Origin: Ruditapes philippinarum | Lineage: Eukaryota | Assembly: GCF_026571515.1 (NCBI RefSeq) | Contig: NW_026857303.1 | Coordinates: 124,001-188,000 of the forward strand | Reading direction: 5' to 3' | DNA length: 64,000 nucleotides | Shown: piece by piece, positions 35,801 to 64,000 of the stretch | Numbering within the stretch: the stretch's first letter is position 1 | Layout: the number at the start of each line of letters is the position of its first letter | The notes under the pieces: generated by a model | What the model saw: the letters and a program-made list of their open reading frames with translations, nothing else | The model's database searches: none | Told to the model about the DNA's origin: nothing | Position numbers and translations under genes: made by a program

Positions 35801-37692
35801 GGGGGTCCCCCAATTAAAAATTTTCCCTGGAGATGAAACTTCATTCCCAACCGGGAATTTCCCCAGAGGTTTTGTTTTATTTTGGGTTTTTTTATAATGT
35901 TGTTTTCGTAAAAAAAAAAGGGAATTTAACCCCCTATTGGGTTGCCTTTTAAAATGAAAACCCCACGTCAACCCAAAGGGAAAATATTTAAAATTTTTTG
36001 ATAATTAAATACCCCGAAAAAAATTACTTATTTTTTATCAAAGAACAATATAAAAAGATGGTTCCCTTTTCCTTTTTTTAAAATAACGCAAAATTTAAAA
36101 TTAAACAAAACTTTATTATTAGTATTTGTTTAAAGGGGATTTAAGGCATTTTATTCTGACCCTTTCGTTGTCCCAAATTTTTTAGTTTTACCTTAGGGTG
36201 GTCATACCTTAAAATAAAACCATTTCAACACTTCACTTAGGCACTTTAATTATAACATTTATTTCATTATTGAAAAATACTTAGTGAATCATACTCTCAG
36301 TACTTTTATTTTGCTTCATTTGTCTGTTATCTAACAATATTAAAGAGTAATGTCCCTTTGATTTAAACATTAAACATAATGTCATGTCATCATTATGTGA
36401 ACATTAATACATTGTTTGATACAAACATTATAGATGGGCGCAGAAATTGGTGCTCGTGCCATAAGTCACTTGGAAGAAATCTCAGAGGATGGAATATCAG
36501 CAATGGCAGCCGCTGGATCGGTAGGAGTAGTGCTACCTACAACAGCTTATATTCTTCGTCTTAAACCTCCGCCGGTCCGACAGATGATTGACAAGGGAAT
36601 GGCTGTAGCTCTCGGTTCTGACTTCAATCCGAATGCTTATTGTTTGACTATGGTAATAAAACGTTTAACAAAATGATTCAATTTATGAATTTCTCGCTAA
36701 TGCTACCCTTTAAATTGCTTCTGTATGGATTGTTTTCGTCCTGTCCATTGCATTCTTAAACACATGTAGATTTACATATTTTTTTCAATTTTGCAATTAA
36801 CAAAAAAGTAGAGAACTAATATTTTACCGACTAGTAAATCACTTTAATTTCTTATTATAATTTAAACTTTTCAGCCACTTGTGATGCACCTTTCCTGTGT
36901 TATTTTGCGCATGAGTATGCCCGAGACACTTAATGCCGCAACAATCAACGCTGCGCATGCGCTAAATCTCTCAGACAAACATGGCTCCATCGAAGTTGGA
37001 AAATATGGAAATTTTGTTGTTTTAGATACAAACCGGTAAGAAATCATTACGAAGGATGTGTTAACTATACATGTTTTATCAAAATGTTTGTCAAGAACGA
37101 AAGGCTAAGGTAGTTCATAAGAAAGTTGTTTTCAGTATACATTAAATCTGTAGCAAAATATTTATGGAACCCCTACTTTAAAGCAAAATAAAAGAAATGC
37201 AAATAAAACAAAGAACATCAGTGCTTTCTCTATAAATAAACTGTCCCTTTCACAAGAATATTGTTATATGATGCAATGAAATGATACTACATACGAAACA
37301 ATCTACAAATGTAGTTAGAAAATTGACTGTTAACATTACTAGAACCACGTTGATTTGCTTATAGCGAGTCAATTGTGCCAGATTCATATTACGCTGATGT
37401 CATAAAACGTTGCTTTTATACGCCAAATACTTAAACATATTTTTTTCGTCTAGAGTTTACAAGATATCTTTGTATAACGTCTGCACAAGTCACTGTTAAT
37501 TTCATTTTACTGCCTGGTATTTCACTATAATATGAACACGTCTTTGTCATTTTGTTTAGTGATTAAGAAAGCTATATCTTACATTTCAGATGGGAAAATC
37601 TTATTTATAAATTTGGCTGCTTCACTGACATAGTGAAAAATGTCATCTTCCAGGGAGAGGTGGTCCATTCTAAGGCAAAATCTAGTAAATAA
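32881..37692 (+). CDS. AMDHD1: Probable imidazolonepropionase (HutI; histidine catabolism), 8 coding exons
   Basis: Exons 32881-33029, 33646-33752, 34682-34746, 34994-35271, 35631-~35868 (3' half garbled), 36434-36652, 36875-37035, 37590-37692. Motifs [101 protein letters not shown]. Confidence 0.93.
33113..33439. mobile_element. TTAA-flanked MITE (Kolobok-like), copy 2, in AMDHD1 intron 1
   Basis: TIRs ttaagcagcatgcctcca ... tggaggcatgcagctttaa; homologous to 3678-4024. Confidence 0.8.
33743..33847 (+). repeat. 21-bp tandem repeat x5 spanning the AMDHD1 exon 2 donor
   Basis: Units attattccaggtaaatattct / attattccgggtaagtattta / attattccaggtaaaggttat / attattcaaggaaaatgttct / tttattccaggtaatctatca. 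Confidence 0.9.
33992..34343. mobile_element. Older TTAA-flanked MITE in AMDHD1 intron 2
   Basis: Degenerate TIRs ttaaaagagactgcacggaggt ... acctcagcggagttcctttaa. Confidence 0.4.
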
Positions 37693-37924
37693 AACGCAAT
37701 GCTATATATACAATGTCATTTTATTTTTGTAGCTTTTACAAACATTTGAGCATGTATGATTTTCACTGCATTGTACTTTTTATCACATTTTAATAAATCT
37801 TGAATTATGTAGATTATTGTTTTGTCATAAATCTTTAGCAGCACACCTATCTAGATTTGTTATTGATTTTTATGAAAATTTACAAAATGAGTAAATATAT
37901 TAGAACGTGTGCAAATACATATAT

Positions 37925-38133
37925 GTTGTGATTGATCATGAAGTCCTTTCTTCGGTTACCTCTGCTCTGGTATGTACTGAAGTTATCAGTTCCTTGCGAG
38001 AATGAAGGCAAATAGTACTGGTAAACTGCTTAACAGCCTGCCCATGTAAGATTCGGTGGCTGAACGGCGCTCTGGTAAATTCAATGTGGCTTATTAACGT
38101 GATCCGAAGTGAAAACTACCAAAACCACCACCA
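37925..38133 (+). mobile_element. Headless SINE, same family as 53204-53503
   Basis: gattgatcatgaagtcctttct...cagttccttgcgag...cagcctg...gattcggtggctgaa...gctctggtaaa...gtgaaaactacc...accaccacc matches the reverse complement of the 53204 element. Confidence 0.75.
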
Positions 38134-39009
38134 TGTTAATTATATGATTACCTTAGCCAGAGAAACTTACTATCAACGATATTACCTATTAGTTTTCAAA
38201 ATATGCAAAACATTCTCTTACTACGTTAGTACCGTATTCTGTTATACTAGTATATTATATATAAACAAAACAATGAATGTATGTCCTAGATATTTAAACA
38301 GGTCTTGAAATATAACTATTTGCTCTAAAATTTGATTTTTAAATGATTTATTTTACTCCTGTGGAAAGAGTTGAAAAATGTCAAACAAACAAACGGTTTT
38401 GGCGTATTTTACCATTTTCTACATCTTCAAAATTTTCAAAATATTTCATTCGTGTGTTAGATATTAAGAGTAACAGATATGTTTAAAGGTATTCAAAATA
38501 CAACAATTTAAATATTACTTCATTTTCCCGTATGCAATGTTGGTCGCTTCGCAAAACAAATCGTAATACATTTTGTATTAATGGTTTAGGATTTTGACCT
38601 TTTCTGGTCTTCATATATCGTATGTGTCGCATTATATTTTGTATATAATATTATATGTGTGTAATTTGTTAATTAACTCCTTACCTTAATTCTTAATTTT
38701 CATATTGTACCCGAAATGCATGGAACAGATTCAATGTTTTTTATTATAATTTAAAGTGTTATAAGTCCGTTTCAAGAACAGGAATCAGTGTAAACCCAGC
38801 AATATGAGTTAACATTTCATAATGTTTAAACCTACAACATATTATTCTAATATTACAATTAATGTTGACCACAACGTATTTTAAACAAATAAAACGTAAA
38901 ATTGATTTGAAACATAATATATTTATAACATGCAATGTCATTCAGACCATTTACATTTTATATCCTTTTGAAGTTTTGCTATGCCAAAATATTTATTATG
39001 TTTACTTTA

Positions 39010-39195
39010 GGCGCAATGTCAATTTCACTTCCTTATACTGACAACTGATAAGAGAATTATTGCATGGAGCTATTATAATCTTTTACGGATCGTTAAACAT
39101 TTAGATTATAAGCTTATAAGCAGGACATGTTATAAACGCTTAAAAAGGAGATAACGGATTCGAAAGGAAGAATGAAGGTTAGTTTCGTTTTATAG
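39010..39195 (+). promoter_or_regulatory. Putative promoter and non-coding first exon of cGLR copy A (paralogous region ~44510-44740)
   Basis: Donor AAG|GTTAGT conserved in both copies; acceptor ctgttacag| at 39625 and 45193; in-frame TGA upstream of the copy A ATG; tttcacttcc (39023-39032) and agtttcgtttt (39181-39191) motifs. Confidence 0.5.
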
Positions 39196-39677
39196 AAATA
39201 TATATATATTCAATATTTCATGTAAAATATTCAATATTTTTGTAATCGTGGAATGCTGTTTAAACATATAAAGTTTGTAAAATATATTGCAATCCGACAA
39301 TAAACACAAATCTATTTCATTCGAACATAATTTATACTTCGGTTGTCCTATTCCAGATTTGAGTGTAACAACTAATCGATTTATTACAATATACAATGTA
39401 CATGTATTATCAATGTTTGTTCAAACTTGAATGAATACTAATTTTGTTATTTGATTCTTGCACTAAATGTACGGAAAAAATCAAGTGTTATATTGAGATT
39501 CATTTGTTATATAATTATAATAAGTGTATTAAAACAAGTGTATTAGAAACAGTACTTTATACCTAACACTAGCATACAAGAGTAAATGTGTATGTTTTTA
39601 TGTACAAATGTACTTCCTGTTACAGTAGCTGGTAGATGTGACAAAAAAGTACATTCAGAGATAACACACCTTCCAAT

Positions 39678-42200
39678 ATGCAAACATCTACATTGGGGAT
39701 TTTTAAAGGTGAAACAATATGGCGTGTTGGACCATATGACCAGAAGACAGCAGAACGTTTAAAACGCAATTTGTCATTACTTACATGTCCAGACAATGCA
39801 CAGGGAATAGAAAATGATCCTCTACCTTACACTATAGAACCGATCTTATTTTCAAAACAGGCAAGCTCTCATCCCGAGTTGATGCCAGAATCAATAGTAA
39901 GAGACATTTTTGATGTCAAGAACATACACAATTCAGGAAGTAAATTCCTAAATCATTCTATAGAGGATTTCATACTTGACTTGGTTTTACCAATCCCAAT
40001 GGCCGGATGTCTTACACTTTTGGCATTGCAAAATTTTCACCGAGAAAAAGAAATGTTTACTGTATCCAGGAACCATAAAGAACATTGTATTGTTTTAACA
40101 GGAAGCTGCTCGGATGGACTAAGTCTGCCAGAAGTTACACACATTAAAAGAAAAAATAAAGTCACAGAAGGTCCTGATGAAGATAAAATATACATATTTA
40201 CATCACTAATCGTTGACAGTGAAAACAGGAGGGCTTTCTGTTCGTTAGATACTTCGAAAAGTCCGCCTGGATATACAAGACTTATCTTCAACAAAGGGTG
40301 GTTGGAAAAGAAACCAAGTAAATATCCAAGAGAACGTATCGAAGAAACTTTTATTAAAAGAAACTATCCGGGATTCTTATCGACAGATGAAAGTGATGTG
40401 GTTGTGAGAAGAAAATTAGTTAATATTCTTAGAAAATATTTAAAGGATGAAATACGTAGTAGGGAAAAGGAACGCTTATTTCTTCGGCGAACTCCATTTG
40501 CCGATTCGACCCCAAGCGTCCATTTTTCTTGCCATGGACCAGCGGTAACTTGTGAACTAGAAAGGTCTGACTTCATGAAAGTTACAATTTCCCGTGATAA
40601 TGTCGTTGCACTCCCGTGTCCACGCTGGCCACATGAAGCATCAGAATGGATCCATAGAGATCGTGTTTGGCCTCCAAAAGCTCTTGTCCGCTTCGTTGTT
40701 AAAGGTGGTTGTCATATTGTCCCAAAAGGGGATAAGCACCACAAAGATGTCCACGACTTCCTCATCTCATTCTCTCACTGTGAGAAACTTATTGCCCTGA
40801 GTCTGAGTATCAAACAGAAGAGATGTTACATGTTGTTCAAGTTCTTATTCAAGTATTCCATAAATAGAATAAATCGCGGGTTAACGACCTACCACTGCAA
40901 AACTATATTTTTCCGTCTCTGCGAGAAAATCCACGAAGATCAGTGGAGTGAAATACATCCCTTTGGTTTTTTGATGAGGTTACTCAATCAGATGGAAAAC
41001 TGTCTGCGAATCGGATATTTGCCAATGTACTTCATACCAAAGCGGAACATGATTCACTTCATGACGAAACGCACGAGGGAGGTAGTGTTGTCTGACATTC
41101 AGAAGGTTATTGAGAACCCAGTAGGTATCTTTCTAGAGCTCACAGAAAAACACAGGTTCTGCTGGCTTTCACAAGACATATCTGCAGCGTGTTTGTTCAC
41201 GCCTTTATTGGTAAATCAAAATTTGTCGAAGAGTTTAGCACAGGAAACGTTATTAACTTACATATCAACACTGCTGGACAAAGGAGAAGTGAGCTTTGTT
41301 CTCTCTCTGTTATGCGGAACTGAAATATGTGACGATCCACCCTCTACAGAAACTGCAATTTATTATGTAGAGAAGGCAGCTGAAAGCGATGGTGGACGAA
41401 GATGTATACGCGTGCAGGCTTTACTTGCGACACTTTACCACCAGCATGCATGCAGCATATCTTTTGGGTCTTTAAATGGTCGGAAATTAATGGTGAAAAG
41501 TTTGGGTATATTTGTGAACATTCTTCGAGAAGAAAATTGTAGTGCGTGGGTAGTTGGTGAATACTACAATCTACTGTTCAACTTACAATGTTATGACAAG
41601 ATCATGAACCATTTCACAACTTTAGTAAGAAGAGACTGCAATCCAACAGCCATAGATTTTTTCAAAAGTGGAATATACACAGTTGTAGATTACCATAACC
41701 GAAGTACAGCAGAAAAGGCAATACAAGTATCCCCGGAATTCATCGTACCTTCTATACTGTATGTCAGTTACAAAGCTATAACGGCCTGTATATGCTTCAT
41801 GGGGCAATACAAACTTCCAAAGGAGGACATTGAGGCCATTTTTAAGTTTAATGAGAAGCTAATGAAGAAGTTACAACTTTGGTTATCAGAGAAGGAGAGG
41901 TTGTACCCCGAATACACAGACGAGTATGCCCATATTATTCTTGGTCTGGGGTATAAGCATCTTGATGACATAGAAAATTACAAAAACGAATTTTGTGCTG
42001 CGGAAGATTTTTCCGTCCCACTTCGTAAGAAAGGAAATTCTTTTGTCTACTTCGAACCGGTAACGGTGAGAATTCATCATAGCTTTAAGAGCTACAGATA
42101 CAGTCCGTATACTCGAAAAAGTAAACGAAAGAAGTCGCGAGTTCCTGCTTTGGATTTCCGATTTAGAGACTTTTTAGTGCATGAGTATACCCACTATTAG
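39678..42200 (+). CDS. cGAS-like receptor / Mab-21-domain nucleotidyltransferase, copy A (840 aa)
   Basis: Uninterrupted ORF; NTase signature G142-S143 (LTGSCSDGL), D167-x-D169, third acid D307 (RDNVVALPCPRWP); Mab-21 motifs PPGYTRL, HGPA, GGCHIVPKG, ISFSHCEKLI, CYMLFK, LTTYHCKTIFF, LPMYFIPKRNM. Confidence 0.9.
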   Translation: MQTSTLGIFKGETIWRVGPYDQKTAERLKRNLSLLTCPDNAQGIENDPLPYTIEPILFSKQASSHPELMPESIVRDIFDVKNIHNSGSKFLNHSIEDFILDLVLPIPMAGCLTLLALQNFHREKEMFTVSRNHKEHCIVLTGSCSDGLSLPEVTHIKRKNKVTEGPDEDKIYIFTSLIVDSENRRAFCSLDTSKSPPGYTRLIFNKGWLEKKPSKYPRERIEETFIKRNYPGFLSTDESDVVVRRKLVNILRKYLKDEIRSREKERLFLRRTPFADSTPSVHFSCHGPAVTCELERSDFMKVTISRDNVVALPCPRWPHEASEWIHRDRVWPPKALVRFVVKGGCHIVPKGDKHHKDVHDFLISFSHCEKLIALSLSIKQKRCYMLFKFLFKYSINRINRGLTTYHCKTIFFRLCEKIHEDQWSEIHPFGFLMRLLNQMENCLRIGYLPMYFIPKRNMIHFMTKRTREVVLSDIQKVIENPVGIFLELTEKHRFCWLSQDISAACLFTPLLVNQNLSKSLAQETLLTYISTLLDKGEVSFVLSLLCGTEICDDPPSTETAIYYVEKAAESDGGRRCIRVQALLATLYHQHACSISFGSLNGRKLMVKSLGIFVNILREENCSAWVVGEYYNLLFNLQCYDKIMNHFTTLVRRDCNPTAIDFFKSGIYTVVDYHNRSTAEKAIQVSPEFIVPSILYVSYKAITACICFMGQYKLPKEDIEAIFKFNEKLMKKLQLWLSEKERLYPEYTDEYAHIILGLGYKHLDDIENYKNEFCAAEDFSVPLRKKGNSFVYFEPVTVRIHHSFKSYRYSPYTRKSKRKKSRVPALDFRFRDFLVHEYTHY

Positions 42201-43380
42201 ATGTACACATGACTTTGCAGTATTCCTACTAGGGGTGTGGACGGTAGCTGGCACATTCCAGAACCGACTATGGACAGACTCAATCAAAACTAGCCTGCAG
42301 CATTTTCAGTTTTGCCGTCATGGACTTTCTTACACTAGGAATTCTGTTTGTCTCTACTTCATTGATTTCATTGTACAGCTATTTTGCGATTTAATTAATT
42401 TCTGAAACAGTATGATGTTTGTAATCTTAGTAGTTGATTGTTCTAAAATATTTCTTACGATGCATTGATGATAGGTCCGTCGATTGCTTTTAAAGATTTT
42501 TAAAGATTATATTTAGAGTATCACAATTGCATGTTAAATACATCTACATGTATTATGTTTACAAGTTAACCCTATAGTTACTTTTGGATGTACAACGTTT
42601 CTACGTTTCAAACATAAAAACTGGAAATTATATATAGTATAATTTTGATCATAATGCAGCTTCCTATTATGAAGCTATAAAGGTATATCTTATTAAAATA
42701 TTTTTGTTAACTTTATAAACAATTAAACATTAAAATTATTTTATAATGGATATAATGGAATATTCTCAAAAATATTGTAACATGAAATGTCACTGGTGTT
42801 TAACACATATGAATAGTGTTGGTTAACAGAATAAAATGTTCCTGAACAAAATATCTGCTATCTTAAGTATGATTTTAACTTCATGCATGCGCTATTCACT
42901 TAAAAGGAAATTTAAAAAGTGTGTCTCTCATACAGGTTTTGTAGGAGTACATCTAAATGTAATCATTTTTTTTTCAAAATTCGGAAAACAAATTACACAG
43001 CATTCCTTCCATTTTAGAAGTAATCTTTTTTTTCAAAAGTAGTAAAACAAATTTTGCAGCATACATTTATTTGAAATGTAAACAAAGTAGTATTTTTACT
43101 TCCATACAAAAAAACTAAATCACTTTATCTGTACTCATTGCCAATAATTAACAGACGCAAATTGTTCAATGAGTAACTTTTCGGAATCTCTAGCAGTACA
43201 TCAATAGTAAAAAAGCTTTAGAGAAATAAAAAATCAAATCTTTTCTGAAGTAAAATAGACCTTTAAAACAGATATACGCGATTCTACAGAGACTAAAAAA
43301 CAACATAAAAGTGTGGATTTTGCAATTGAACAAGAACAGTATGTGTGATTTGCTTTGAAATGAATAGAAAACCATGCTGT

Positions 43381-43494
43381 TGTCTCATATTACAAAATTT
43401 ATCACGCAAGGCTTAGAAAAAAAAAATGATAGTCGAGGTTTATCCCAGCCATCATTTTTTTGTGCCGAGCCTGATAAATTTATAATATCAGACA
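43381..43494. repeat. Imperfect inverted repeat (MITE-like) between the duplicated units
   Basis: tgtctcatattacaaaatttatca...aaaaaaatgat pairs with atcattttttt...tgataaatttataatatcagaca. Confidence 0.7.
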
Positions 43495-45258
43495 CTTGTC
43501 TGGCATTCTGTTTGTCATATTTTCAATTTTAATATGCGTTTCTTTCTTTAAATTTAAATGAAACAAATACCTGTTAAGAACCTTTCGATTAAATGCCGCG
43601 CGCATTAAGTCCCAGATGTTTTTAGTCCAATGTAAGAGAATTTTTATTATTTAAAAACTCTATTCGATTAGAGTTCATCAGTTTTATATTTTCAAACTAG
43701 TAATAGTTGAACATACTCCATTCTCTTAATTTTATTTCAATATGTATTGATGAGGTGTGCAATCAAACTGAGGGCGACTGATAAAGCTAAAAGTATCTGA
43801 CATGCACTTTATTAACAGAAATGCTGATGATAACATGATAGAAAGGCATTCAAAATACAACAAGTAATTACTTCTTTTTTGTTTGCAATGTTGGTCGCTT
43901 TGCAAGAAAAATCGTAATGTCATCGGTTAAGGATTTAGACCTAACTGTTATAAAAACTTTCTAATCTTCATATATCGCATGAGTTGTATTATATTTCGTA
44001 TATAATATTATGATTTTTTTCTGTATTTTGTAAAGTTATAACTTACTTAAGCTTTTTATTTTTATATCTGATAATATGTTGTACTCGAAATGCACTTAAT
44101 GATCCAACTTTGAAGGAAGAATTTCAAATGTTTCAAATGGTTGTTTCAAGAACAGGAATAAGTTGTTAATCGAAATTTTAAACCTAACAATATGAGCGAA
44201 CATTTCATTTCGTTTAAACTTACGACATATAAACCTGATATCACAATCGATGTTCACTTATTTTCGGCGCCATATGACCTAAATTGTTTTTAACCAAACA
44301 ATAACAAAATATATAAAAAAGAAGACTACTCATATACAACAAAATGGAGTGGTAAAAACGGATACTATTGTTGATCGTAACGTATTTTAAGCAATTATAA
44401 CGTAGAATTGATTTTAAACATAACATATTTTTACCATGCCGTGTTTTTAAGACATTTATATTTTAAGCCATGAAATTAGATCTATAACCATGATAAAAAT
44501 GTTTACTTTAGGCACAATGATAATTTTACTTCCTTATACAGATAACCACTGACTGATATTAGGAAAATGCATGGAGATAACAAATATTTTACAGATCGTT
44601 AAAAAAAACCATTGAGATTGTTAGCTCACATTGAAAAGCAGAGCATGTTATTAACGCTTAAATATGAACACAACGGATTCGAACGGGTGAAACTTGTTTT
44701 CTGCTTTCATGATCAAATAAAGGTTAGTTTCGTTTTATACACATACATATATACATTCAATATTATGTCTAAAGTATTCAATATTTTGTTATCAATTTGA
44801 ACTCCTTGAAATGTCGAGTGAACATGTAAAGTTTGTTCAAACTAAATTTCAACCCCATGGGCGTTTTGACAATGAACACAAATCTATTTTATTAGAACAG
44901 AATGTATACTTCGGCTGTTCTATTCCAAAATTTGGGTGCAATAACTAATAATTTATTACATGATATTAGTAATGTTTATTTCGAACTTAAATGCAGGCTA
45001 ATTTTGTTATTTCGCTCTTGCACTAATGTACGAAAAAAAATTCAAATATGAAGTTGCATTTGTTTGTAATCAAGAGTGAAAAAATATGAAATAATTGCAA
45101 TAAGTGTATTAAAACAGTACTTTATATACCTATATCTAGCATACACATATAAAAAGTCAATGTATTTTATGTACAAATGTATTTTCTGTTACAGTAGCTG
45201 GTAAGCGTGAAAAGATATACATTGAATATAACTGAACAGAGATAGCACACCTGTCAAT

Positions 45259-47790
45259 ATGCAAACATCTGCAAAAAATGGGACTTTTAAAGGTGAAGCA
45301 ATATGGCATGTGAGAGCGCATAACCAGAAGACAGTAGAACGTTTAAAACATAATTTTTCATTACTTACATGTCCAGACAATGCACAGGGAATAGAAAATG
45401 ATCCTCTACCTTATACTATAGAACCGATCCCGTATTCAGTACGGCCAAGTTCTCATCCTGAGTTGATGCCAGAATCTATAGCAAGAGAAATCTTTGATGT
45501 CGATGTTAAGAACACAAACAAGTCAGAAAATTATTTTCTTACTCACTCTACGGAGGATTTTATTCTTGACTTGGTTTTACCAATTCCAATGGCAGGATGT
45601 CTTACACTTTATGCAATGCAAAATTTTCAACGAGAAAAAGAAATGCTTACTGTATCCAGAAATCATAAAGAACATTGCACTGTTTTAACAGGAAGCTGCT
45701 CGGATGGACTAAGTTTGCCAGAAGTAACACACATAAAACGAAAACATAAAGTCACAGAAGGTCCAGATGAAGACAAAATCTACATATTTACTTCACTGAT
45801 TGTTGACAGTGAAAACAGGAGGGCTTTCTGCTCGTTGGATACTTCGAAAAGTCCGCCTGGATATACAAGACTTATCATGAACACAGGATGGTTGGAAAAG
45901 AGACCAAGTAAATATCCACGAGAACGTGTTGAAGAAACTCTCATAAAACGAAACTATCCGGGATTCTTATCGTCAGATGAAAGAGATGTTGTTGTGAGAA
46001 GTAAATTAGTTAGTATTCTCAGAAAATATTTAAAGGATGAAATACGTAGTAGGGAAAAGGAACGCTTATTTTTTCGGAGAACTCCATTTGCCGATTCGAC
46101 CCCAAGCGTCCATTTTTCTTGCCATGGACCAGCGGTAACTTGTGAATTAGAAAGATCTGATTTTATGAAAGTAACACTTTCCTGTGATAATGTCGTTGCA
46201 CTCCCGTGTCCGCGCTGGCCACATGAAGCAGCAGAATGGATCCATAGAGATCGTGCTTGGCCTTCAAAAGCTCTTGTCCGTTTTGTTGTTAAAGGTGGTT
46301 GTCATATTGTCCCAAAGGGGGATAAACACCACAAAGATGCCCACGACTTCCTCATATCATTCTCTCACTGTGAGAAACTTATTGCCCTGAGTTTGAGTAT
46401 CAAACAGAAGAGATGTTACATGTTGTTCAAGTTCTTATTCAAGTATTCCATAAATAGAGTAAATCGCGGGTTAACTACCTACCACTGCAAAACTATATTT
46501 TTCCAGCTCTGCGAGAAAATCCATGAAGATCAGTGGAGTGAAATTCACCCCTTTGATTTTTTGATGAGGTTACTCAATCAGATGGAAAACTGTCTGCGAA
46601 TCGGATATTTGCCAATGTACTTCATACCAAAGCGGAACATGATTCACTTCATGACGAAACGCACGAGGGAGGTTGTGTTGTCTGACATTCAGAAGGTTAT
46701 TGAGAACCCAGTAGGTATCTTTCTAGAGCTGACAGAAAAACACAGGTTCTGCTGGTTTTCACAAGACATATCAGCAGCGTGTTTGTTCACGCCTTTATTG
46801 GTAAATCAACAATTGTCGAACAGTTTAGCACAGGAAACGTTATTAACTTACATATCAACACTGCTGGACAAAGGAGAAGTGGGCTTTGTTCTCTCTTTGT
46901 TATGCGGAACTGAAATATGTGACCAGCCACCCTCTACAGAAACTGCAATTTATTATGTAGAGAAGGCAGCTAAAAGCGATGGTGGATCAGGCTGTATAAG
47001 CGTTCAGGCTTTACTTGCGACACTTTACCACCAACATGCATGTAGCATATCTTTTGGGTATTTAACTGGTCGCAAATTAATGATGAAAAGTTTGGGTATA
47101 TTTGAGAACATTCTTCGAGAAGAAAATTGTAGTGCGTGGGTAGTTGGTGAATACTACAATCTACTGTTCAACTTACAATGGTATGACAAGATCATGAACC
47201 ATTTTACCACTATAGTAAGAAGAGACTTTAATCCGACAGGCATTGATTTTTTCAAAAGTGGAATATACACAGTTGTAGATTATCATAACCGAAGTACAGT
47301 AGAAAAGGCAATCCAAGTATGCCCGGAATTCATCGTACCTTCTATACTGTATGTCAGTTACAAAGCTATAACAGCCAGTATATGCTTCATGGGGCAATAC
47401 AAATTACCAAACGTGGACATTGAGACCATTTTTAAGTTTAATGAGAAGCTAATGAAGAAGTTACAACTTTGGTTATCAGAGAAGGAGAGGTTGTACCCCG
47501 AATACACAGACGAGTATGCCCATATTATTCTTAGTTTGGGGTTTAAGCATCTTGATGACATTGGAAGTTACAAAAACGAATTGTGTGCTGCTGAAGATTT
47601 TGACATCCCACTTCGTAAGGAAGGAACTAATTTTGTCTTCATCGAACCGGTAACGGTGAGAATTCATCATAGCTTTAAGAGCTACAGATACAGTCCGTAC
47701 ACTCGAAAAAGTAAACGAAAGAAGTCGAGAGTTCCTGATTTGGATTTCCGATTTAGAGACTTTTTAGTGCACGAATATACACACTATTAG
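45259..47790 (+). CDS. cGAS-like receptor / Mab-21-domain nucleotidyltransferase, copy B (843 aa)
   Basis: Close paralog of 39678-42200 with the same motifs (G145-S146, D170-x-D172, D310) and an intact ORF. Confidence 0.9.
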   Translation: MQTSAKNGTFKGEAIWHVRAHNQKTVERLKHNFSLLTCPDNAQGIENDPLPYTIEPIPYSVRPSSHPELMPESIAREIFDVDVKNTNKSENYFLTHSTEDFILDLVLPIPMAGCLTLYAMQNFQREKEMLTVSRNHKEHCTVLTGSCSDGLSLPEVTHIKRKHKVTEGPDEDKIYIFTSLIVDSENRRAFCSLDTSKSPPGYTRLIMNTGWLEKRPSKYPRERVEETLIKRNYPGFLSSDERDVVVRSKLVSILRKYLKDEIRSREKERLFFRRTPFADSTPSVHFSCHGPAVTCELERSDFMKVTLSCDNVVALPCPRWPHEAAEWIHRDRAWPSKALVRFVVKGGCHIVPKGDKHHKDAHDFLISFSHCEKLIALSLSIKQKRCYMLFKFLFKYSINRVNRGLTTYHCKTIFFQLCEKIHEDQWSEIHPFDFLMRLLNQMENCLRIGYLPMYFIPKRNMIHFMTKRTREVVLSDIQKVIENPVGIFLELTEKHRFCWFSQDISAACLFTPLLVNQQLSNSLAQETLLTYISTLLDKGEVGFVLSLLCGTEICDQPPSTETAIYYVEKAAKSDGGSGCISVQALLATLYHQHACSISFGYLTGRKLMMKSLGIFENILREENCSAWVVGEYYNLLFNLQWYDKIMNHFTTIVRRDFNPTGIDFFKSGIYTVVDYHNRSTVEKAIQVCPEFIVPSILYVSYKAITASICFMGQYKLPNVDIETIFKFNEKLMKKLQLWLSEKERLYPEYTDEYAHIILSLGFKHLDDIGSYKNELCAAEDFDIPLRKEGTNFVFIEPVTVRIHHSFKSYRYSPYTRKSKRKKSRVPDLDFRFRDFLVHEYTHY

Positions 47791-49058
47791 GTATACAGTA
47801 TTCCTACTTGGATATGTTGCCTGCTTTTTATATTTTGTTTATGAAATAAAAGTAGCAAAATGTAAACAAAGTAGTATTTTGGCTTCCATACAAAAAACTA
47901 AATCACTTTAACTGTACTAGTTGCTAAAATGCAACAGATACAAATGATGGTTCAAGTAATTGGCCAATGAGATACTTTTCGGAAGAAGTTCAAGCAGGAC
48001 AACAAAAGTAAAAAGCTTTAGAGAAGAAAACAAAAATTATGAGGTATAATGGGCCTTTAAAACAGATGTACATGATTCTACAGAGACAAAAATAGAACAT
48101 AAAAAGAATGGATTTTGAAATTGAATATGAATAGTAAGTGTGATTTGCAGCGGTTTAGCAACGAAATGTTCGTAGAATAGTGTACAAAATCTTTATCAAT
48201 GTTTATTACTTGTTGTAGTATGGAGACAATAACTCGCCGGTCTTTATTTAAATACTGTGTATTATAATAAATGCAAATCTTAGCTTTGTAATCATTATTG
48301 TTAGTAAATGTATTATTTTTCATTCGTTTTACCATGTCTTTATATTTCTTGCTGGACAAATATTGAACATTGAATTTAAAAACTATATATTCATAATTTT
48401 GATGCCAGCAAAATAAGTTTTGTGTCTTTGAAGTCAGCTTTTCACAAATTAAAATGGTAATGATAGGTGTCTCTAACATCGCCCAGGTAGGTGCTGTGTG
48501 TGCGTGCTGGCCGACTATTTAACAGCGGTTACCTCCAAGCACCTGTTCAAAATAGTATTCAATTTTCAATATTAAAGCATTGAATCAATAAGTCAAAATT
48601 GAGATATTGTAAAACTATGAAGATCAGTTATGATGTGATTACCAATGTCCTTTATATCACATTGTAACAATAAACTTCAGTCAGGACCTTCTTATATGAT
48701 AATAATTGCATTTTACAACTAATTAATAGGAAAATGAAAATGCACACAAAAACCACAATGATGGTAAAATCCATAATGGTAATTTATCAGGTAGTCTGCT
48801 GACTGTGTGATAGTTTTGTCCCACTTTGAATTTCGTGCTTTTAGAGCTTTATTCAGTATCAATATACAAAATATGAGGTACTTACTGTATAGAACCTGAA
48901 CAGTTTGAACTGACCTTTTACTGGTAGCAAATTCTAATCACATCCGGTTCAAGAAGGATAAGTATAAAGGGACGTAACTGATACACATTATAATAACTAT
49001 CATGTATTGCATTTTGAGCACTAATGTGCAAGAACATACCAAGACTCCCTTGTAATAT

Positions 49059-62515: not shown

Positions 62516-64000
62516 TTATTGATGTCTAATTGGTATGAGTAGGTTATTGTGTTTTTGATAAAAGTAAACATAGAATGGTTTTGTAAAAATATTTTGTAGT
62601 TTGTTTGCTATGGTCATACTAAGAGGAATTGCTGAAGAAACATAAAGAATTGTTTCAGACTGTTTGTCCACTATAGAGAAGCCAGGCCAACATACAGTTA
62701 ACTTGCATGACAGACAATGCTTTTCAATGTTAAAATCAGATACTGAAGCAGGGACATTGATATGGTAACTAGATGGGCACCTGGGCAACCGAATAATGTC
62801 AAGTAGAACACAGTCATCATTGTTTAAGATCTCTAGACACACTGTAGAGTTTTTACTTTTACAATTCTTTTTAAACAAGTAGATAGCAATCAAAATAAGT
62901 ATGAGAAGAAGCAAAACAAAATTTGAATGTTCCCATTTTAAGTCCAAAGACAGAGACTGATTTAGCTGTGGAGCTGCAGTTTTTGGTTTGTAAATAAAAC
63001 TAGGAACTGTAGATGGAAGCCCTTTGACTTGTTGCACCTGTTGTATAATTAATAAGGCCGTGCTTTGTTTCCTTACTCTATGGAATGTATATAAGAGTAA
63101 GATTGTCAAAAATACAGTTACATTCATAGTATATAACAACAATATTTCATTTGCAAAGGAAATAATATATGGCATAGCAATATCTAATGGGTATTCAATC
63201 TCAAAACTTTGGTACCAAAAGTCACTTGCAATGAACACAGGGTTTTCTTTCTTTAAGAGAATTCCGTGATTAAGCTGTTTCACATTTTCTGTTCTTTCAC
63301 TTAAATAAATCAGACCGAACATGACCATTATGCACATTAGTACACACATCAGAATAGAGCCATCACTGAACCCTGGGCATCTTCTGCACTGTGCCTCTGA
63401 GTTGTTCTGTCGTGCCATTTTCAGTTGTTGGTTTTCCTGTCTTTGATCCTGGTTCTGTTGTCTCTGGTGCCTTTGTCTACTCCATGTTTGATTATAAGTC
63501 TGTTTGAGCTCAAGCTTTGACAGTTTCTTATTTATAGCACACAACTGTTCATTGATATTGTCACTGATTTGTGTGGCAGCCACTGGTGCAATTGTCACTG
63601 GAATATTTGTAGCTGCTAAAGTTTGTTCAGCAAGGCTGCAAGCCTTCCGCAAATCTTCAAGTGTCTTGTGATTTTGTGGCATTACAATCTGTTTTACACT
63701 ATTTGATAATCCTTTTAAAGTTAAACTAATAAGTAAACCTTCAGGATACTGTTTGTTGGCTATTGTTTGGTAAATCCTAGTGAAGTAGGATGCTGTGCTT
63801 TCACCTGGCAGTTGCTGTAAGTTAAATAGAGCCATATCAGCATTAAGGCCATTACTACCATTAAAACGTAGTCGCAAGGCTGTTGTCAATTGATTAAGGT
63901 CAGATGTCACCTCATCAGACTGCATGTGTAACCAAGCCAGTGCATGGTCTCTCAAGTAGAAAGGAATGAGTCTTGCTCTTTTATCTCTAGCTACGGCATT
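62516..64000 (-). mobile_element. LTR retroelement ORF: Gag (capsid-like) fused to an Env-like multi-TM region, no Pol; 5' end outside the window
   Basis: Frame is open to the window edge (NAVARDKRARLIPFYLRDHALAWL...). Gag-like motifs FYLRDHALAW, LRLRF, LQQLPGESTASYFTRI, LKGLSNSVKQIV; partial knuckle CRRC; then three hydrophobic segments and a Cys-containing C-terminal domain. Confidence 0.75.

What the first reader, a model, noticed from the sequence alone, without database searches (positions are those of the whole stretch)
39678..47790. Tandem pair of large cGAS-like receptors with intact catalytic triad: candidate uncharacterised second-messenger immune system
Seen: two intact ~840-aa ORFs, each with GS, DxD and the third Asp of the cGAS/DncV-like NTase fold and the Mab-21 helical lobe, an unusually long basic loop between GS and DxD (HIKRKNK/HIKRKHK), a ~130-aa N-terminal extension and a ~350-aa C-terminal region. 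No cGAS zinc-thumb motif is evident. Known: animal cGLRs are pattern-recognition enzymes that make cyclic dinucleotides for STING, and the family is expanded in bivalves. Inference: two active sensors with unknown ligand and nucleotide product, possibly acting together or with split specificity.
Basis: partly seen in the sequence, partly recalled or inferred. Interest (0 to 1): 0.8.

Follow-up and report, generated by a model that had tools for sequence, protein, structure and literature searches.

The report
Tandem clam cGAS-like receptor–TPR genes
Two neighbouring, transcribed clam genes encode cGAS-like (Mab-21 fold) proteins with conserved catalytic residues fused to a family-specific TPR-like tail. 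They are real and probably enzymes, but they belong to a gene family already known to be hugely expanded in bivalves.

Summary
ORF A (39678-42200, 840 aa) and ORF B (45259-47790, 843 aa) are intact and 89% identical. Both hit Pfam Mab-21 NTase and Mab-21_C above cut-off.

The AlphaFold model of residues 94-490 overlays the whole catalytic domain of oyster Cv-cGLR1, coral Sp-cGLR1 and cGAS (Z about 20.8, rmsd 2.8-3.5 Å). G142/S143, D167 and D307 are invariant and D169 is nearly so. There is no zinc thumb. Residue-level superposition of GS and DxD could not be done, and the model is weak around GS.

Transcript contigs cover gene A and show a 448-nt GT-AG intron in its 5'UTR. dN/dS between A and B is 0.29, and 0.10-0.15 in the core.

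The 350-aa C-terminus is a TPR-like solenoid. It was found only in this orthogroup: 11 clusters among 1.84 billion representatives, and every named member is a bivalve. The motif spacing falls outside the published cGLR pattern.

This genome holds many other Mab-21(+TPR) ORFs. Bivalve cGLR radiations and TPR fusions are published, and the scan's first readers noted other cGLR+TPR loci in this genome.

Verdict: new members of a known kind. Catalysis, ligand, product and any A/B cooperation are untested.

The parts
38485..42207 (+). Duplication unit 1 (upstream flank, 5'UTR exon and intron, CDS A)
   Evidence: blastn of unit 1 against unit 2. 39296-42207 matches 44868-47797 at 89.8%. Upstream pieces match at only 74-84%.
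39124..39177 (+). Non-coding exon 1 of gene A. The 3' end is defined; the 5' end is unknown.
   Evidence: A transcript contig in run X5 joins 39177 to 39626, with 54 nt on the upstream side. The donor reads AAG|GTTAGT.
39178..39625 (+). 448-nt GT..AG intron in the 5'UTR of gene A
   Evidence: The joint skips 448 nt with GT..AG ends. The acceptor reads cttcctgttacag|.
39678..42200 (+). CDS A, 840 aa, on a single coding exon
   Evidence: ORF. Transcript contigs of X1 and X5 cover 39643-42485 (X1) and extend to 42734 (X5), and nothing else in the flanks apart from interspersed-repeat peaks.
39678..39962 (+). N-terminal extension, aa 1-95, predicted disordered and lineage-specific
   Evidence: pLDDT is below 50 for most of it. 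It is present only in the window species, Mercenaria and partly P0011. dN/dS is 0.54.
39963..40802 (+). NTase core lobe, aa 96-375
   Evidence: Pfam PF03281 covers residues 183-371. VIA alignment begins at model residue 94-99 against the start of the cGAS catalytic domain. dN/dS is 0.15.
40101..40106 (+). Codons of G142 and S143 (NTase GS motif, LTGS)
   Evidence: Invariant in 12 of 12 family members, in 2 further members and in the genome paralogues sampled.
40107..40175 (+). 23-aa loop between GS and DxD, containing HIKRKNK. The model predicts a beta-hairpin.
   Evidence: Strands 153-157 and 160-164 in the model, pLDDT 53-59. The loop is 23-24 aa across the family.
40176..40184 (+). Codons of D167-E168-D169 (putative metal-binding DxD at the start of a beta strand)
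   Evidence: D167 is invariant. D169 is present in 11 of 12 members; Potamilus has N. The motif aligns in register with the SDxD of paralogues.
40596..40598 (+). Codon of D307 (third catalytic Asp)
   Evidence: Invariant. HMMER aligns it to the SVD of Sp-cGLR1 and to mouse cGAS D307, which is human D319 (PMC5699495).
40815..41102 (+). Mab-21 C-terminal helical lobe, aa 380-475
   Evidence: Pfam PF20266, 54 bits. dN/dS is 0.10. It contains Y405, the equivalent of cGAS Y436.
41163..42011 (+). TPR-like alpha-solenoid, aa 496-778, acidic (pI 5.3), with a conserved beta-hairpin insert (GIYT...HN..T)
   Evidence: AF2 model with pLDDT 74 and 12 helices. Best Foldseek hits are all TPR proteins at E about 1e-2. 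VIA Z is about 10 to TPR proteins. No Pfam hit. The sequence is found only in this orthogroup.
42012..42197 (+). Basic C-terminal tail, aa 779-840, with conserved PY, a KSKRKKSR cluster and an invariant penultimate His
   Evidence: Alignments. pI is above 10. pLDDT is low.
42201..42485 (+). 3'UTR of gene A, minimum extent
   Evidence: The X1 contig spans 41916-42485 and the X5 contig reaches 42734.
43074..43353 (.). Copy of a short interspersed repeat downstream of gene A
   Evidence: At least 1391 candidate copies in the genome at about 75% identity. There is a high RNA depth peak with many loose ends.
43842..47797 (+). Duplication unit 2
   Evidence: blastn.
44723..45194 (+). Predicted 5'UTR intron of gene B, by homology with A. 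No RNA evidence was laid.
   Evidence: The same donor (AAG|GTTAGTTTCG) and acceptor (ttctgttacag|TAGCTGG) sequences as in A.
45259..47790 (+). CDS B, 843 aa, with G145/S146, D170/D172 and D310
   Evidence: ORF. Pfam Mab-21 at 64.6 bits and Mab-21_C at 57.8 bits. 89% identical to A.
47858..48148 (.). Copy of the same interspersed repeat downstream of gene B

Best explanation
A and B are recent tandem duplicates (dS about 0.18) of one gene. That gene belongs to a small, vertically inherited orthogroup whose named members are all bivalves.

Domain layout, shown here:
- A cGAS-like receptor (Mab-21 / CD-NTase fold) core.
- A family-specific TPR-like alpha-solenoid.
- A conserved basic tail.
- All coding sequence lies on one exon, behind a spliced 5'UTR.

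Most likely mechanism, inferred:
1. The basic core (pI about 9.2) binds an activating ligand, probably a nucleic acid.
2. Binding orders the GS loop and the beta strands that carry D167/D169 and D307.
3. The enzyme then joins NTPs into a cyclic or linear oligonucleotide signal.
4. That signal is read by a clam STING or another receptor.
5. The faster-evolving acidic TPR-like domain and the basic tail regulate the core or recruit partners.

Shown: fold, residue conservation, purifying selection, transcription of A.
Inferred: catalysis, ligand, product, STING link, role of the TPR domain and tail.
For: - Pfam Mab-21 and Mab-21_C both exceed cut-off.
- Best solved relatives by sequence are Sp-cGLR1 (E 1.5e-30 with the family profile), MB21D2 and cGAS.
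- Model residues 94-490 overlay the entire catalytic domains of Cv-cGLR1, Sp-cGLR1 and human or mouse cGAS. Z is 20.7-20.8, rmsd 2.8-3.7 Å, over 284-308 residues.
- G142, S143, D167 and D307 are invariant and D169 is present in 11 of 12 members. Two more divergent members also keep them.
- D307 aligns to the catalytic third Asp of cGAS (PMC5699495).
- Y405 aligns to cGAS Y436, and the SFS and K350 positions are conserved.
- GS and DxD align in register with the canonical GSxxEGT...SDxD of genome paralogues.
- dN/dS between A and B is 0.29 overall, 0.15 in the NTase lobe and 0.10 in the helical lobe.
- Transcript contigs are confined to the ORF and UTRs, with a GT-AG 5'UTR intron.
- Core pI is 9.1-9.3. 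Published nucleic-acid-sensing cGLRs have pI above 8.5 (PMC9980059).
- A STING_LBD exon is present in the genome, 30 bits against a cut-off of 27.
- The tree follows a plausible bivalve phylogeny, with lineage-specific duplications.
Against: - No family member fits the published cGLR active-site pattern. GS to DxD is 23-24 aa against 8-20, and DxD to D is 124-140 aa against 50-90. The 'h' positions are polar: DEDK and RDN.
- AF2 confidence is low exactly around GS (pLDDT 27-41 at residues 120-150) and only moderate at DxD and D307.
- The N-terminal half of the core has no detectable sequence match to solved NTases, either as a single sequence or as a profile.
- The equivalent of cGAS R376 is Leu or Ile.
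- Potamilus has DEN instead of DED.
- Intact triads do not guarantee activity. MB21D2 has a complete putative active site (PMC9980059), and to my knowledge no product has been reported for it. Shrimp Mab21 proteins made no cGAMP (PMC12928593).
- Expression in the sampled RNA-seq is low, about 0.3-3x.
Confidence: 0.55

Rival explanations
1. Non-enzymatic Mab-21 scaffold. The proteins keep the fold but signal through protein-protein contacts, using the TPR-like domain and the conserved tail. They would boost a kinase or adaptor, as shrimp LvMab21 proteins do with IKK-epsilon, without making a nucleotide messenger.
For: - The motif spacing and the polar 'h' positions lie outside the published active-cGLR pattern.
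- The model is poor around GS.
- There is a large, conserved protein-interaction-type TPR-like domain and a conserved C-terminal peptide.
- One orthologue has DEN.
- There is a precedent: shrimp Mab21 proteins bind IKK-epsilon, bind no dsDNA or dsRNA and make no cGAMP (PMC12928593).
Against: - GS, D167 and D307 are invariant and D169 nearly so, across proteins only 31-40% identical overall. The cGAS Y436 equivalent and the SFS motif are conserved too. This is hard to explain without a nucleotide-binding active site.
- Constraint is strongest on the catalytic lobes, with dN/dS 0.10-0.15.
Confidence: 0.3
2. Active nucleotidyltransferase with a conserved non-immune or housekeeping role. It would be an MB21D2-like orphan, unconnected to STING or pathogen sensing.
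For: - Unlike the hundreds of fast-radiating paralogues, this is a low-copy orthogroup (1-3 genes per species) whose tree follows a plausible bivalve phylogeny.
- Steady-state expression is low.
- MB21D2 is the second-best solved relative by sequence.
Against: - Recurrent lineage-specific tandem duplication in the window species and in Sinanodonta, together with faster evolution of the TPR-like part (dN/dS 0.48), is typical of immune receptors.
- The closest solved relative is a dsRNA-activated coral cGLR (PMC9980059).
Confidence: 0.12
3. Not functional genes: chance ORFs, decaying retrocopies or transposon cargo.
For: The coding sequence is intronless, interspersed repeats flank both copies, and the genome holds many Mab-21 relics according to the scan's first readers.
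Against: - Two 2.5-kb ORFs in 31% GC DNA.
- dN/dS is 0.29 with dS 0.18.
- The flanks are more diverged than the ORFs.
- There is a spliced 5'UTR, and transcript contigs are confined to the gene.
- Orthologues exist in at least 4 named bivalve genera.
Confidence: 0.02

Closest known systems
Invertebrate cGAS-like receptors: Sp-cGLR1 (PDB 8GJY, coral, dsRNA to 3'3'-cUA) and Cv-cGLR1 (PDB 8GJW, oyster, dsDNA to 2'3'-cUA); Li et al. 2023, PMC9980059
   Same: - Bilobed Mab-21/CD-NTase fold: Z 20.7-20.8 and rmsd 3.5-3.7 Å over 294-308 residues.
- Best sequence match in the PDB.
- GS, two acidic residues and a third Asp are present.
- No zinc thumb.
- Basic core.
- Cv-cGLR1 also has a long extension beside the core: the matched chain residues are 288-633.
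   Different: - The loop between GS and DxD is 23-24 aa, and there are about 45 extra residues before the third Asp. This lies outside the published motif spacing.
- A C-terminal TPR-like solenoid of about 280 aa and a conserved basic tail are found only in this orthogroup.
- Ligand and product are unknown.
Vertebrate cGAS
   Same: - Catalytic-domain fold: Z about 20.8, rmsd 2.8 Å, 23-24% identity in the structural alignment.
- The third Asp, the Y436 equivalent, the SFS motif and the PAVT strand all align.
   Different: - No zinc-thumb insertion.
- The R376 equivalent is Leu or Ile.
- The N-terminal extension is unrelated.
- There is an extra TPR-like domain.
- It is not an orthologue.
cGLR-TPR fusion proteins of bivalves, including the roughly 700-aa Mab-21(+weak TPR) paralogues in this genome
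   Same: The architecture is a Mab-21 core followed by a helical-repeat C-terminus on a single long ORF. This architecture class is reported in PMC9980059.
   Different: - Only about 30% identical, and only over residues 260-500.
- The C-terminal regions share no detectable sequence similarity.
- This orthogroup keeps the cGAS-like helix 244-259 that the paralogues lack, and matches more of the Pfam NTase model: positions 24-193 against 76-197.
- It is low-copy and conserved across bivalve orders rather than species-specifically radiated.
Human MB21D2 (PDB 7LT1)
   Same: It is the second-best solved relative by sequence, E 6.5e-23 with the family profile. It is an orphan Mab-21 protein with a complete putative active site (PMC9980059).
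   Different: The match covers only the region from WP onwards (residues 310-470). MB21D2 has no TPR-like domain.
Shrimp LvMab21-1/2/3 (PMC12928593)
   Same: Invertebrate Mab-21 proteins with an immune role. They serve as a model for a non-enzymatic mode of action.
   Different: No sequence comparison was made here. They are reported to act through IKK-epsilon without CDN synthesis. Whether the clam proteins do the same is untested.

Membership tests
Mab-21 family (Pfam PF03281 + PF20266) | Both Pfam domain models score above the gathering cut-off | tested here: met
   A scores 58.4 and 54.1 bits and B scores 64.6 and 57.8 bits, against a cut-off of 24.1.
cGAS-like receptors (criteria of Li et al. 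2023, PMC9980059) | Catalytic residues present: GS, two acidic residues on the next strand and a third acidic residue | tested here: met
   G142, S143, D167 and D307 are invariant and D169 is present in 11 of 12 members. Two further members also keep them. D307 aligns to the cGAS and Sp-cGLR1 catalytic Asp.
cGAS-like receptors (criteria of Li et al. 2023, PMC9980059) | Exact published pattern h[QT]GS[X8-20][DE]h[DE]h[X50-90]h[DE]h | tested here: not met
   The regex fails for all 12 family members. Spacings are 23-24 and 124-140, and the motifs read DEDK and RDN or KDY. This pattern is a curation filter rather than a mechanistic requirement, but the proteins may be missing from the published catalogue.
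cGAS-like receptors (criteria of Li et al. 2023, PMC9980059) | Homology across both the NTase core and the C-terminal helix bundle | tested here: met
   Both Pfam domains match. The profile alignment to Sp-cGLR1 covers chain residues 123-374.
cGAS-like receptors (criteria of Li et al. 2023, PMC9980059) | Predicted structure directly homologous to known cGLR or CD-NTase structures | tested here: met
   VIA Z is 20.8 and Foldseek E is 5e-11 to 8GJY, 8GJW and cGAS, covering model residues 94-490. Caveat: pLDDT is below 50 at residues 105-147 and 260-305.
cGAS-like receptors | The catalytic triad converges on the NTP and metal site (residue-level superposition) | not testable with these tools
Fold searches return only aligned ranges. 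Sequence and profile searches of the N-terminal half found no NTase.
cGAS-like receptors | [quoted passage not shown] | not testable with these tools
   This needs biochemistry.
cGLR-STING pathway | A STING receptor is encoded in the same genome | tested here: inconclusive
   There is one exon-level STING_LBD match, 30 bits against a cut-off of 27, with one internal stop in the frame read. The related clam Mercenaria is listed with 9 STING genes (supplement of PMC9980059).
cGAS proper (vertebrate orthologue) | Zinc-thumb H(X5)CC(X6)C insertion | tested here: not met
   The family profile shows a gap where mouse cGAS carries the ...HGIEKTCCESSGAKCC... segment.
Tetratricopeptide repeat (TPR) domains | Match to TPR sequence models | tested here: not met
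   No TPR Pfam hit at E up to 1 for A or B.
Tetratricopeptide repeat (TPR) domains | TPR-type helical-hairpin solenoid fold | tested here: inconclusive
   The best Foldseek hits are all TPR proteins but only at E 1e-2 to 1e-1. VIA Z is 9-10, and the tool states that Z below about 13 for helical repeats may reflect only a common arrangement. I therefore call it 'TPR-like' only.

The most novel reading that the evidence does not exclude
This low-copy cGLR orthogroup, known so far only from bivalves, has a beta-hairpin inserted between GS and DxD, a private TPR-like solenoid and an invariant C-terminal peptide. It could be a distinct class of sensor. The TPR-like module, rather than the basic groove, would recognise a non-nucleic-acid or protein ligand, or would hold the enzyme auto-inhibited by docking its own tail. 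The product could be a nucleotide signal other than the known 2'3'- or 3'3'-cyclic dinucleotides. A and B, which differ mostly in the TPR-like and N-terminal parts (dN/dS about 0.5), would then have begun to split ligand specificity.
Probability: 0.15. Interest if true: 0.65.

Novelty: new member of a known kind. Interest (0 to 1): 0.35.

Why it matters
Bivalves carry the largest known cGLR repertoires, and only a few of these proteins have a known ligand or product. This orthogroup is a tractable entry point: it is conserved across bivalve orders, low in copy number and encoded on a single exon. It also sits outside the motif spacing used to catalogue cGLRs, so published counts may miss such proteins. 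If it is active, it would show that the cGLR active site tolerates large insertions, and it would tie a TPR-like module to cyclic-nucleotide signalling. If it is inactive, it would be a second example of Mab-21 proteins signalling without catalysis.

Tried and rejected
1. Residue-level confirmation of GS and DxD by sequence. phmmer of residues 98-210 against the PDB, and a profile of that region built from the family plus paralogues, found only chance hits. Pfam scans of fragments 120-200 and 96-241 gave nothing.
2. PADLOC (bacterial CD-NTase models) and NCBIfam: no hit.
3. A second word-index search with the family profile returned the same 12 proteins.
4. Sequence comparison of the C-terminal region with the C-termini of eight genome paralogues found nothing significant.
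5. ESM Atlas on residues 496-840 gave only sub-threshold molluscan hypothetical clusters, scores 0.85-0.87.
7. The sigma-70 promoter scan is irrelevant to a eukaryote and was ignored.
8. Pfam scans of the other ORFs of 75 aa or more between 30 and 58 kb found only an amidohydrolase exon upstream. No linked immune gene was found.
A deeper-alignment model of the core alone could therefore not be made.
11. Chance ORF, retrocopy or transposon cargo was considered and rejected (see rival explanations).
Full report
**Observation**

The window is AT-rich (about 31% GC), and the two ORFs stand out at 38-40% GC. ORF A (39678-42200, 840 aa) and ORF B (45259-47790, 843 aa) are by far the longest open frames in 64 kb; the next is 479 aa. 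They are 89% identical in protein and 92.6% in nucleotides.
- LTGS at 140-143
- HIKRKNK at 154-160
- DED at 167-169
- RDN with D307

**Family and fold**

Both proteins hit Pfam Mab-21 NTase (PF03281) and Mab-21_C (PF20266) well above the gathering cut-off. Against PDB sequences the best match is the coral cGAS-like receptor Sp-cGLR1 (8GJY). It scores E 1e-15 with one sequence and 1.5e-30 with the family profile, followed by MB21D2, cGAS and Mab21L1.

An AlphaFold2 model of the whole protein used 12 sequences and reached pLDDT 66 and pTM 0.66. Foldseek ranks it closest to 8GJY and cGAS, at E 5e-11 and below. In the VIA second look, model residues 94-490 overlay the entire catalytic domains of several proteins with Z 20.7-20.8, rmsd 2.8-3.7 Å and 284-308 aligned residues:
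- oyster Cv-cGLR1 (8GJW)
- Sp-cGLR1
- human cGAS (161-521)
- mouse cGAS (147-507)

The cGAS-like fold is therefore secure. It begins near residue 95, not 130.

**Active site**

The word-index search found a small family:
- Mercenaria (66% identity)
- Mactra
- Potamilus
- three Sinanodonta proteins
- four unnamed ENA or Logan clusters

In the 12-sequence alignment G142, S143, D167 and D307 are invariant. D169 is present in 11 of 12 members; Potamilus has DEN. Two more divergent members found later keep all of these residues.

HMMER aligns the family 'SkDyvvalPC' to the 'SVD' of Sp-cGLR1 and to mouse cGAS 'ISVDIILALES'. By counting along the printed alignment, this is D307 in mouse and D319 in human, the third catalytic acid (catalytic acids E225, D227 and D319 as in PMC5699495). 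The same alignment places invariant Y405 on cGAS Y436 and the SFS motif on S378 and S380. The partner of Y436, R376, is Leu or Ile here (PMC5699495).

GS and DxD could not be tied to solved structures by sequence. They do align in register with the canonical 'GSxSEGT...SDxD' of paralogues from the same genome.

The model is weak exactly around GS, with pLDDT 27-41 at residues 120-150. It predicts a beta-hairpin (153-157 and 160-164) in the long loop between GS and DxD. Residue-level superposition was not possible with these tools.

No family member matches the published cGLR pattern h[QT]GS[X8-20][DE]h[DE]h[X50-90]h[DE]h (PMC9980059). The spacings are 23-24 and 124-140, and the 'h' positions are polar. 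There is no zinc-thumb insertion.

**Are they genes?**

One reads call was laid on 37700-43699.
- In two runs that look like transcriptome assemblies (X1 and X5), contigs cover 39643-42485 (X1) and extend to 42734 (X5).
- Nothing else in the flanks is covered except two sharp peaks at 37.9-38.1 kb and 42.9-43.3 kb. The second peak is a short interspersed repeat with at least 1391 candidate copies in the genome.
- One X5 contig joins 39177 to 39626 across a 448-nt GT..AG intron. The splice signals are good (AAG|GTTAGT and ttacag|). Both signals are conserved upstream of gene B.
- Raw RNA-seq reads (X23 and X24, 4-5% of each run sampled) lie on the ORF at low depth, 0.3-3x.

So gene A is a spliced, transcribed gene with its whole coding sequence on exon 2. 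Gene B's expression was not tested.

The duplicated unit runs from about 38485 to 42207 and from about 43842 to 47797. The ORFs are 89.8% identical but the upstream flanks only 74-84%.

Nei-Gojobori dN/dS between A and B is 0.29, with dS 0.18. By region:

| Region | dN/dS |
|---|---|
| NTase lobe | 0.15 |
| Mab-21_C | 0.10 |
| N-terminal extension | 0.54 |
| C-terminal TPR-like region | 0.48 |

Both copies are therefore constrained, most strongly in the catalytic core.

**C-terminal region**

Folded alone, residues 490-840 reach pLDDT 74 and pTM 0.76. The model is an all-alpha solenoid of about 12 helices, interrupted by a conserved beta-hairpin and followed by a low-confidence basic tail.
- The best Foldseek hits are all TPR proteins (consensus TPR, LGN/Pins, APC subunits, kinesin light chain, MamA), but only at E 1e-2 to 1e-1.
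- The Foldseek-independent search gives Z 9-10 to TPR proteins. The tool warns that this level is common for helical repeats.
- No TPR Pfam model matches.

I call the region TPR-like.

An exhaustive HMMER scan of 1.84 billion representatives with this part alone found 11 proteins at E 1e-3 or better, and all 11 scored 1e-18 or better. Eight of the eleven carry at least part of the Mab-21 core in front of the match (P0001, P0007, P0008, P0011, P0032, P0033, P0035, P0037). P0036 begins in a sub-threshold Mab-21_C remnant. P0031 and P0034 show only the C-terminal module and are probably truncated models. So the module is not seen in any other domain context.

It has no detectable sequence similarity to the C-termini of the genome's other Mab-21 paralogues.

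The region is acidic (pI 5.3), whereas the core is basic (pI 9.1-9.3) and the tail very basic. The tail carries an invariant PY and an invariant penultimate His. The function of the tail is unknown. Docking into the protein's own TPR-like groove is a speculation.

**Genomic and evolutionary context**

The window is part of a 1.4-Gb genome. An earlier follow-up note from this scan calls it Manila clam; I did not check this.

A six-frame search with protein A finds only A and B as close copies. It also finds at least 54 scored other Mab-21 matches (555 first-look candidates) at about 30% identity over residues 260-500. Most lie in open frames of about 600-730 aa. Some carry weak TPR hits.

The family tree has three groupings:
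- (A, B) with Mercenaria, then Mactra
- Potamilus with the three Sinanodonta proteins
- a third clade of unnamed sequences

This pattern suggests vertical descent with separate recent duplications in the window species and in Sinanodonta. The three Sinanodonta genes have consecutive locus tags on one contig.

One STING ligand-binding-domain exon scores above cut-off in the genome. The supplement of PMC9980059 lists 247 cGLRs and 9 STINGs for Mercenaria. That paper also reports more than 200 cGLRs in some bivalves and that a minority of cGLRs are fused to TPR or ankyrin repeats. First readers of this scan noted several other cGLR+TPR arrays elsewhere in this genome.

**Interpretation**

The most likely reading (about 0.55) is a ligand-activated nucleotidyltransferase of the cGLR kind. 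Its basic core binds a nucleic acid, and its product feeds a STING-type receptor. The TPR-like domain and tail would be regulatory or partner-binding.

The main rival (about 0.3) is a catalytically silent Mab-21 scaffold acting through its TPR-like domain. The precedent is the shrimp Mab21 proteins that activate IKK-epsilon without making cGAMP. The unusual spacing, the polar residues beside the acids and the poor model around GS keep this rival alive. The invariance of the catalytic and base-stacking residues across proteins only 31-40% identical argues against it.

They look like an ordinary young tandem pair, although their differences concentrate in the N-terminal and TPR-like parts.

**Verdict**

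These are new members of a known kind: bivalve cGLR/Mab-21 proteins with a helical-repeat fusion. Two modest points of interest remain. The orthogroup is conserved and low in copy number, and its active-site spacing lies outside the published catalogue pattern.

- Read laying was kept to 6,000 letters.

Noticed in passing
window 40257-41824 (gene A CDS): Of 36 well-supported differences between the window and transcript contigs of other individuals (runs X1 and X5), 18 carry the base found at the homologous position of gene B. This could mean A/B-mosaic alleles from gene conversion, chimeric assembly of A and B transcripts, or an intermediate haplotype.
   Followed up: partly
window 43074-43353 and 47858-48148; also 37900-38100: A short interspersed repeat of about 200 nt sits downstream of each gene copy. 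It has at least 1391 candidate copies in the genome at about 75% identity. It gives very high RNA depth with many loose ends. A similar expressed repeat peak lies at 37.9-38.1 kb.
   Followed up: partly
window 42207-43074: Unit A has about 810 nt between the stop codon and the interspersed repeat that unit B lacks; in B the gap is only about 60 nt. Gene A's 3'UTR contigs run into this A-specific segment. The two genes therefore probably have different 3'UTRs.
   Followed up: no
G000, many contigs (for example L003-L010: C9081, C14510, C11964, C12204): The genome holds at least 54 scored (555 candidate) other Mab-21 matches, most in open frames of about 600-730 aa and often clustered on the same contig. 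Some carry weak TPR hits. L007, L009 and L010 have a canonical GSQSEGT...SDxD motif. L004 reads SDIN, so its second acid is lost and it is probably inactive.
   Followed up: partly
P0005-P0007 (Sinanodonta woodiana, locus tags ACJMK2_023557 to 023559): Three orthologues, 86% identical to each other, carry consecutive locus tags on one contig. This looks like an independent tandem triplication of the same gene in a freshwater mussel.
   Followed up: partly
window 36434-36673 (+): This ORF has a weak Amidohydro_3 match (E 0.003, below cut-off). It is consistent with an exon of the amidohydrolase (AMDHD1-like) gene that another first-reader note places just upstream.
   Followed up: no
window 62516-63955 (-): A 479-aa ORF has only sub-threshold Pfam hits, TniQ and HolB_lid. 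Another first-reader note calls it a gag-env fusion. It was not examined further.
   Followed up: no
G000:C7837:112707-113015 (L011): This is the only STING ligand-binding-domain match found in the genome by the six-frame search. It scores 30 bits and has one TAA inside the frame read. It was not assembled into a gene model.
   Followed up: no
window 42132-42197 and 47722-47787 (last ~22 codons of A and B): The extreme C-terminus is conserved across the whole orthogroup as [PE][YF]xH-x-COOH, with an invariant penultimate His, and an invariant PY lies about 30 residues upstream. This looks like a short linear motif of unknown partner.
   Followed up: no
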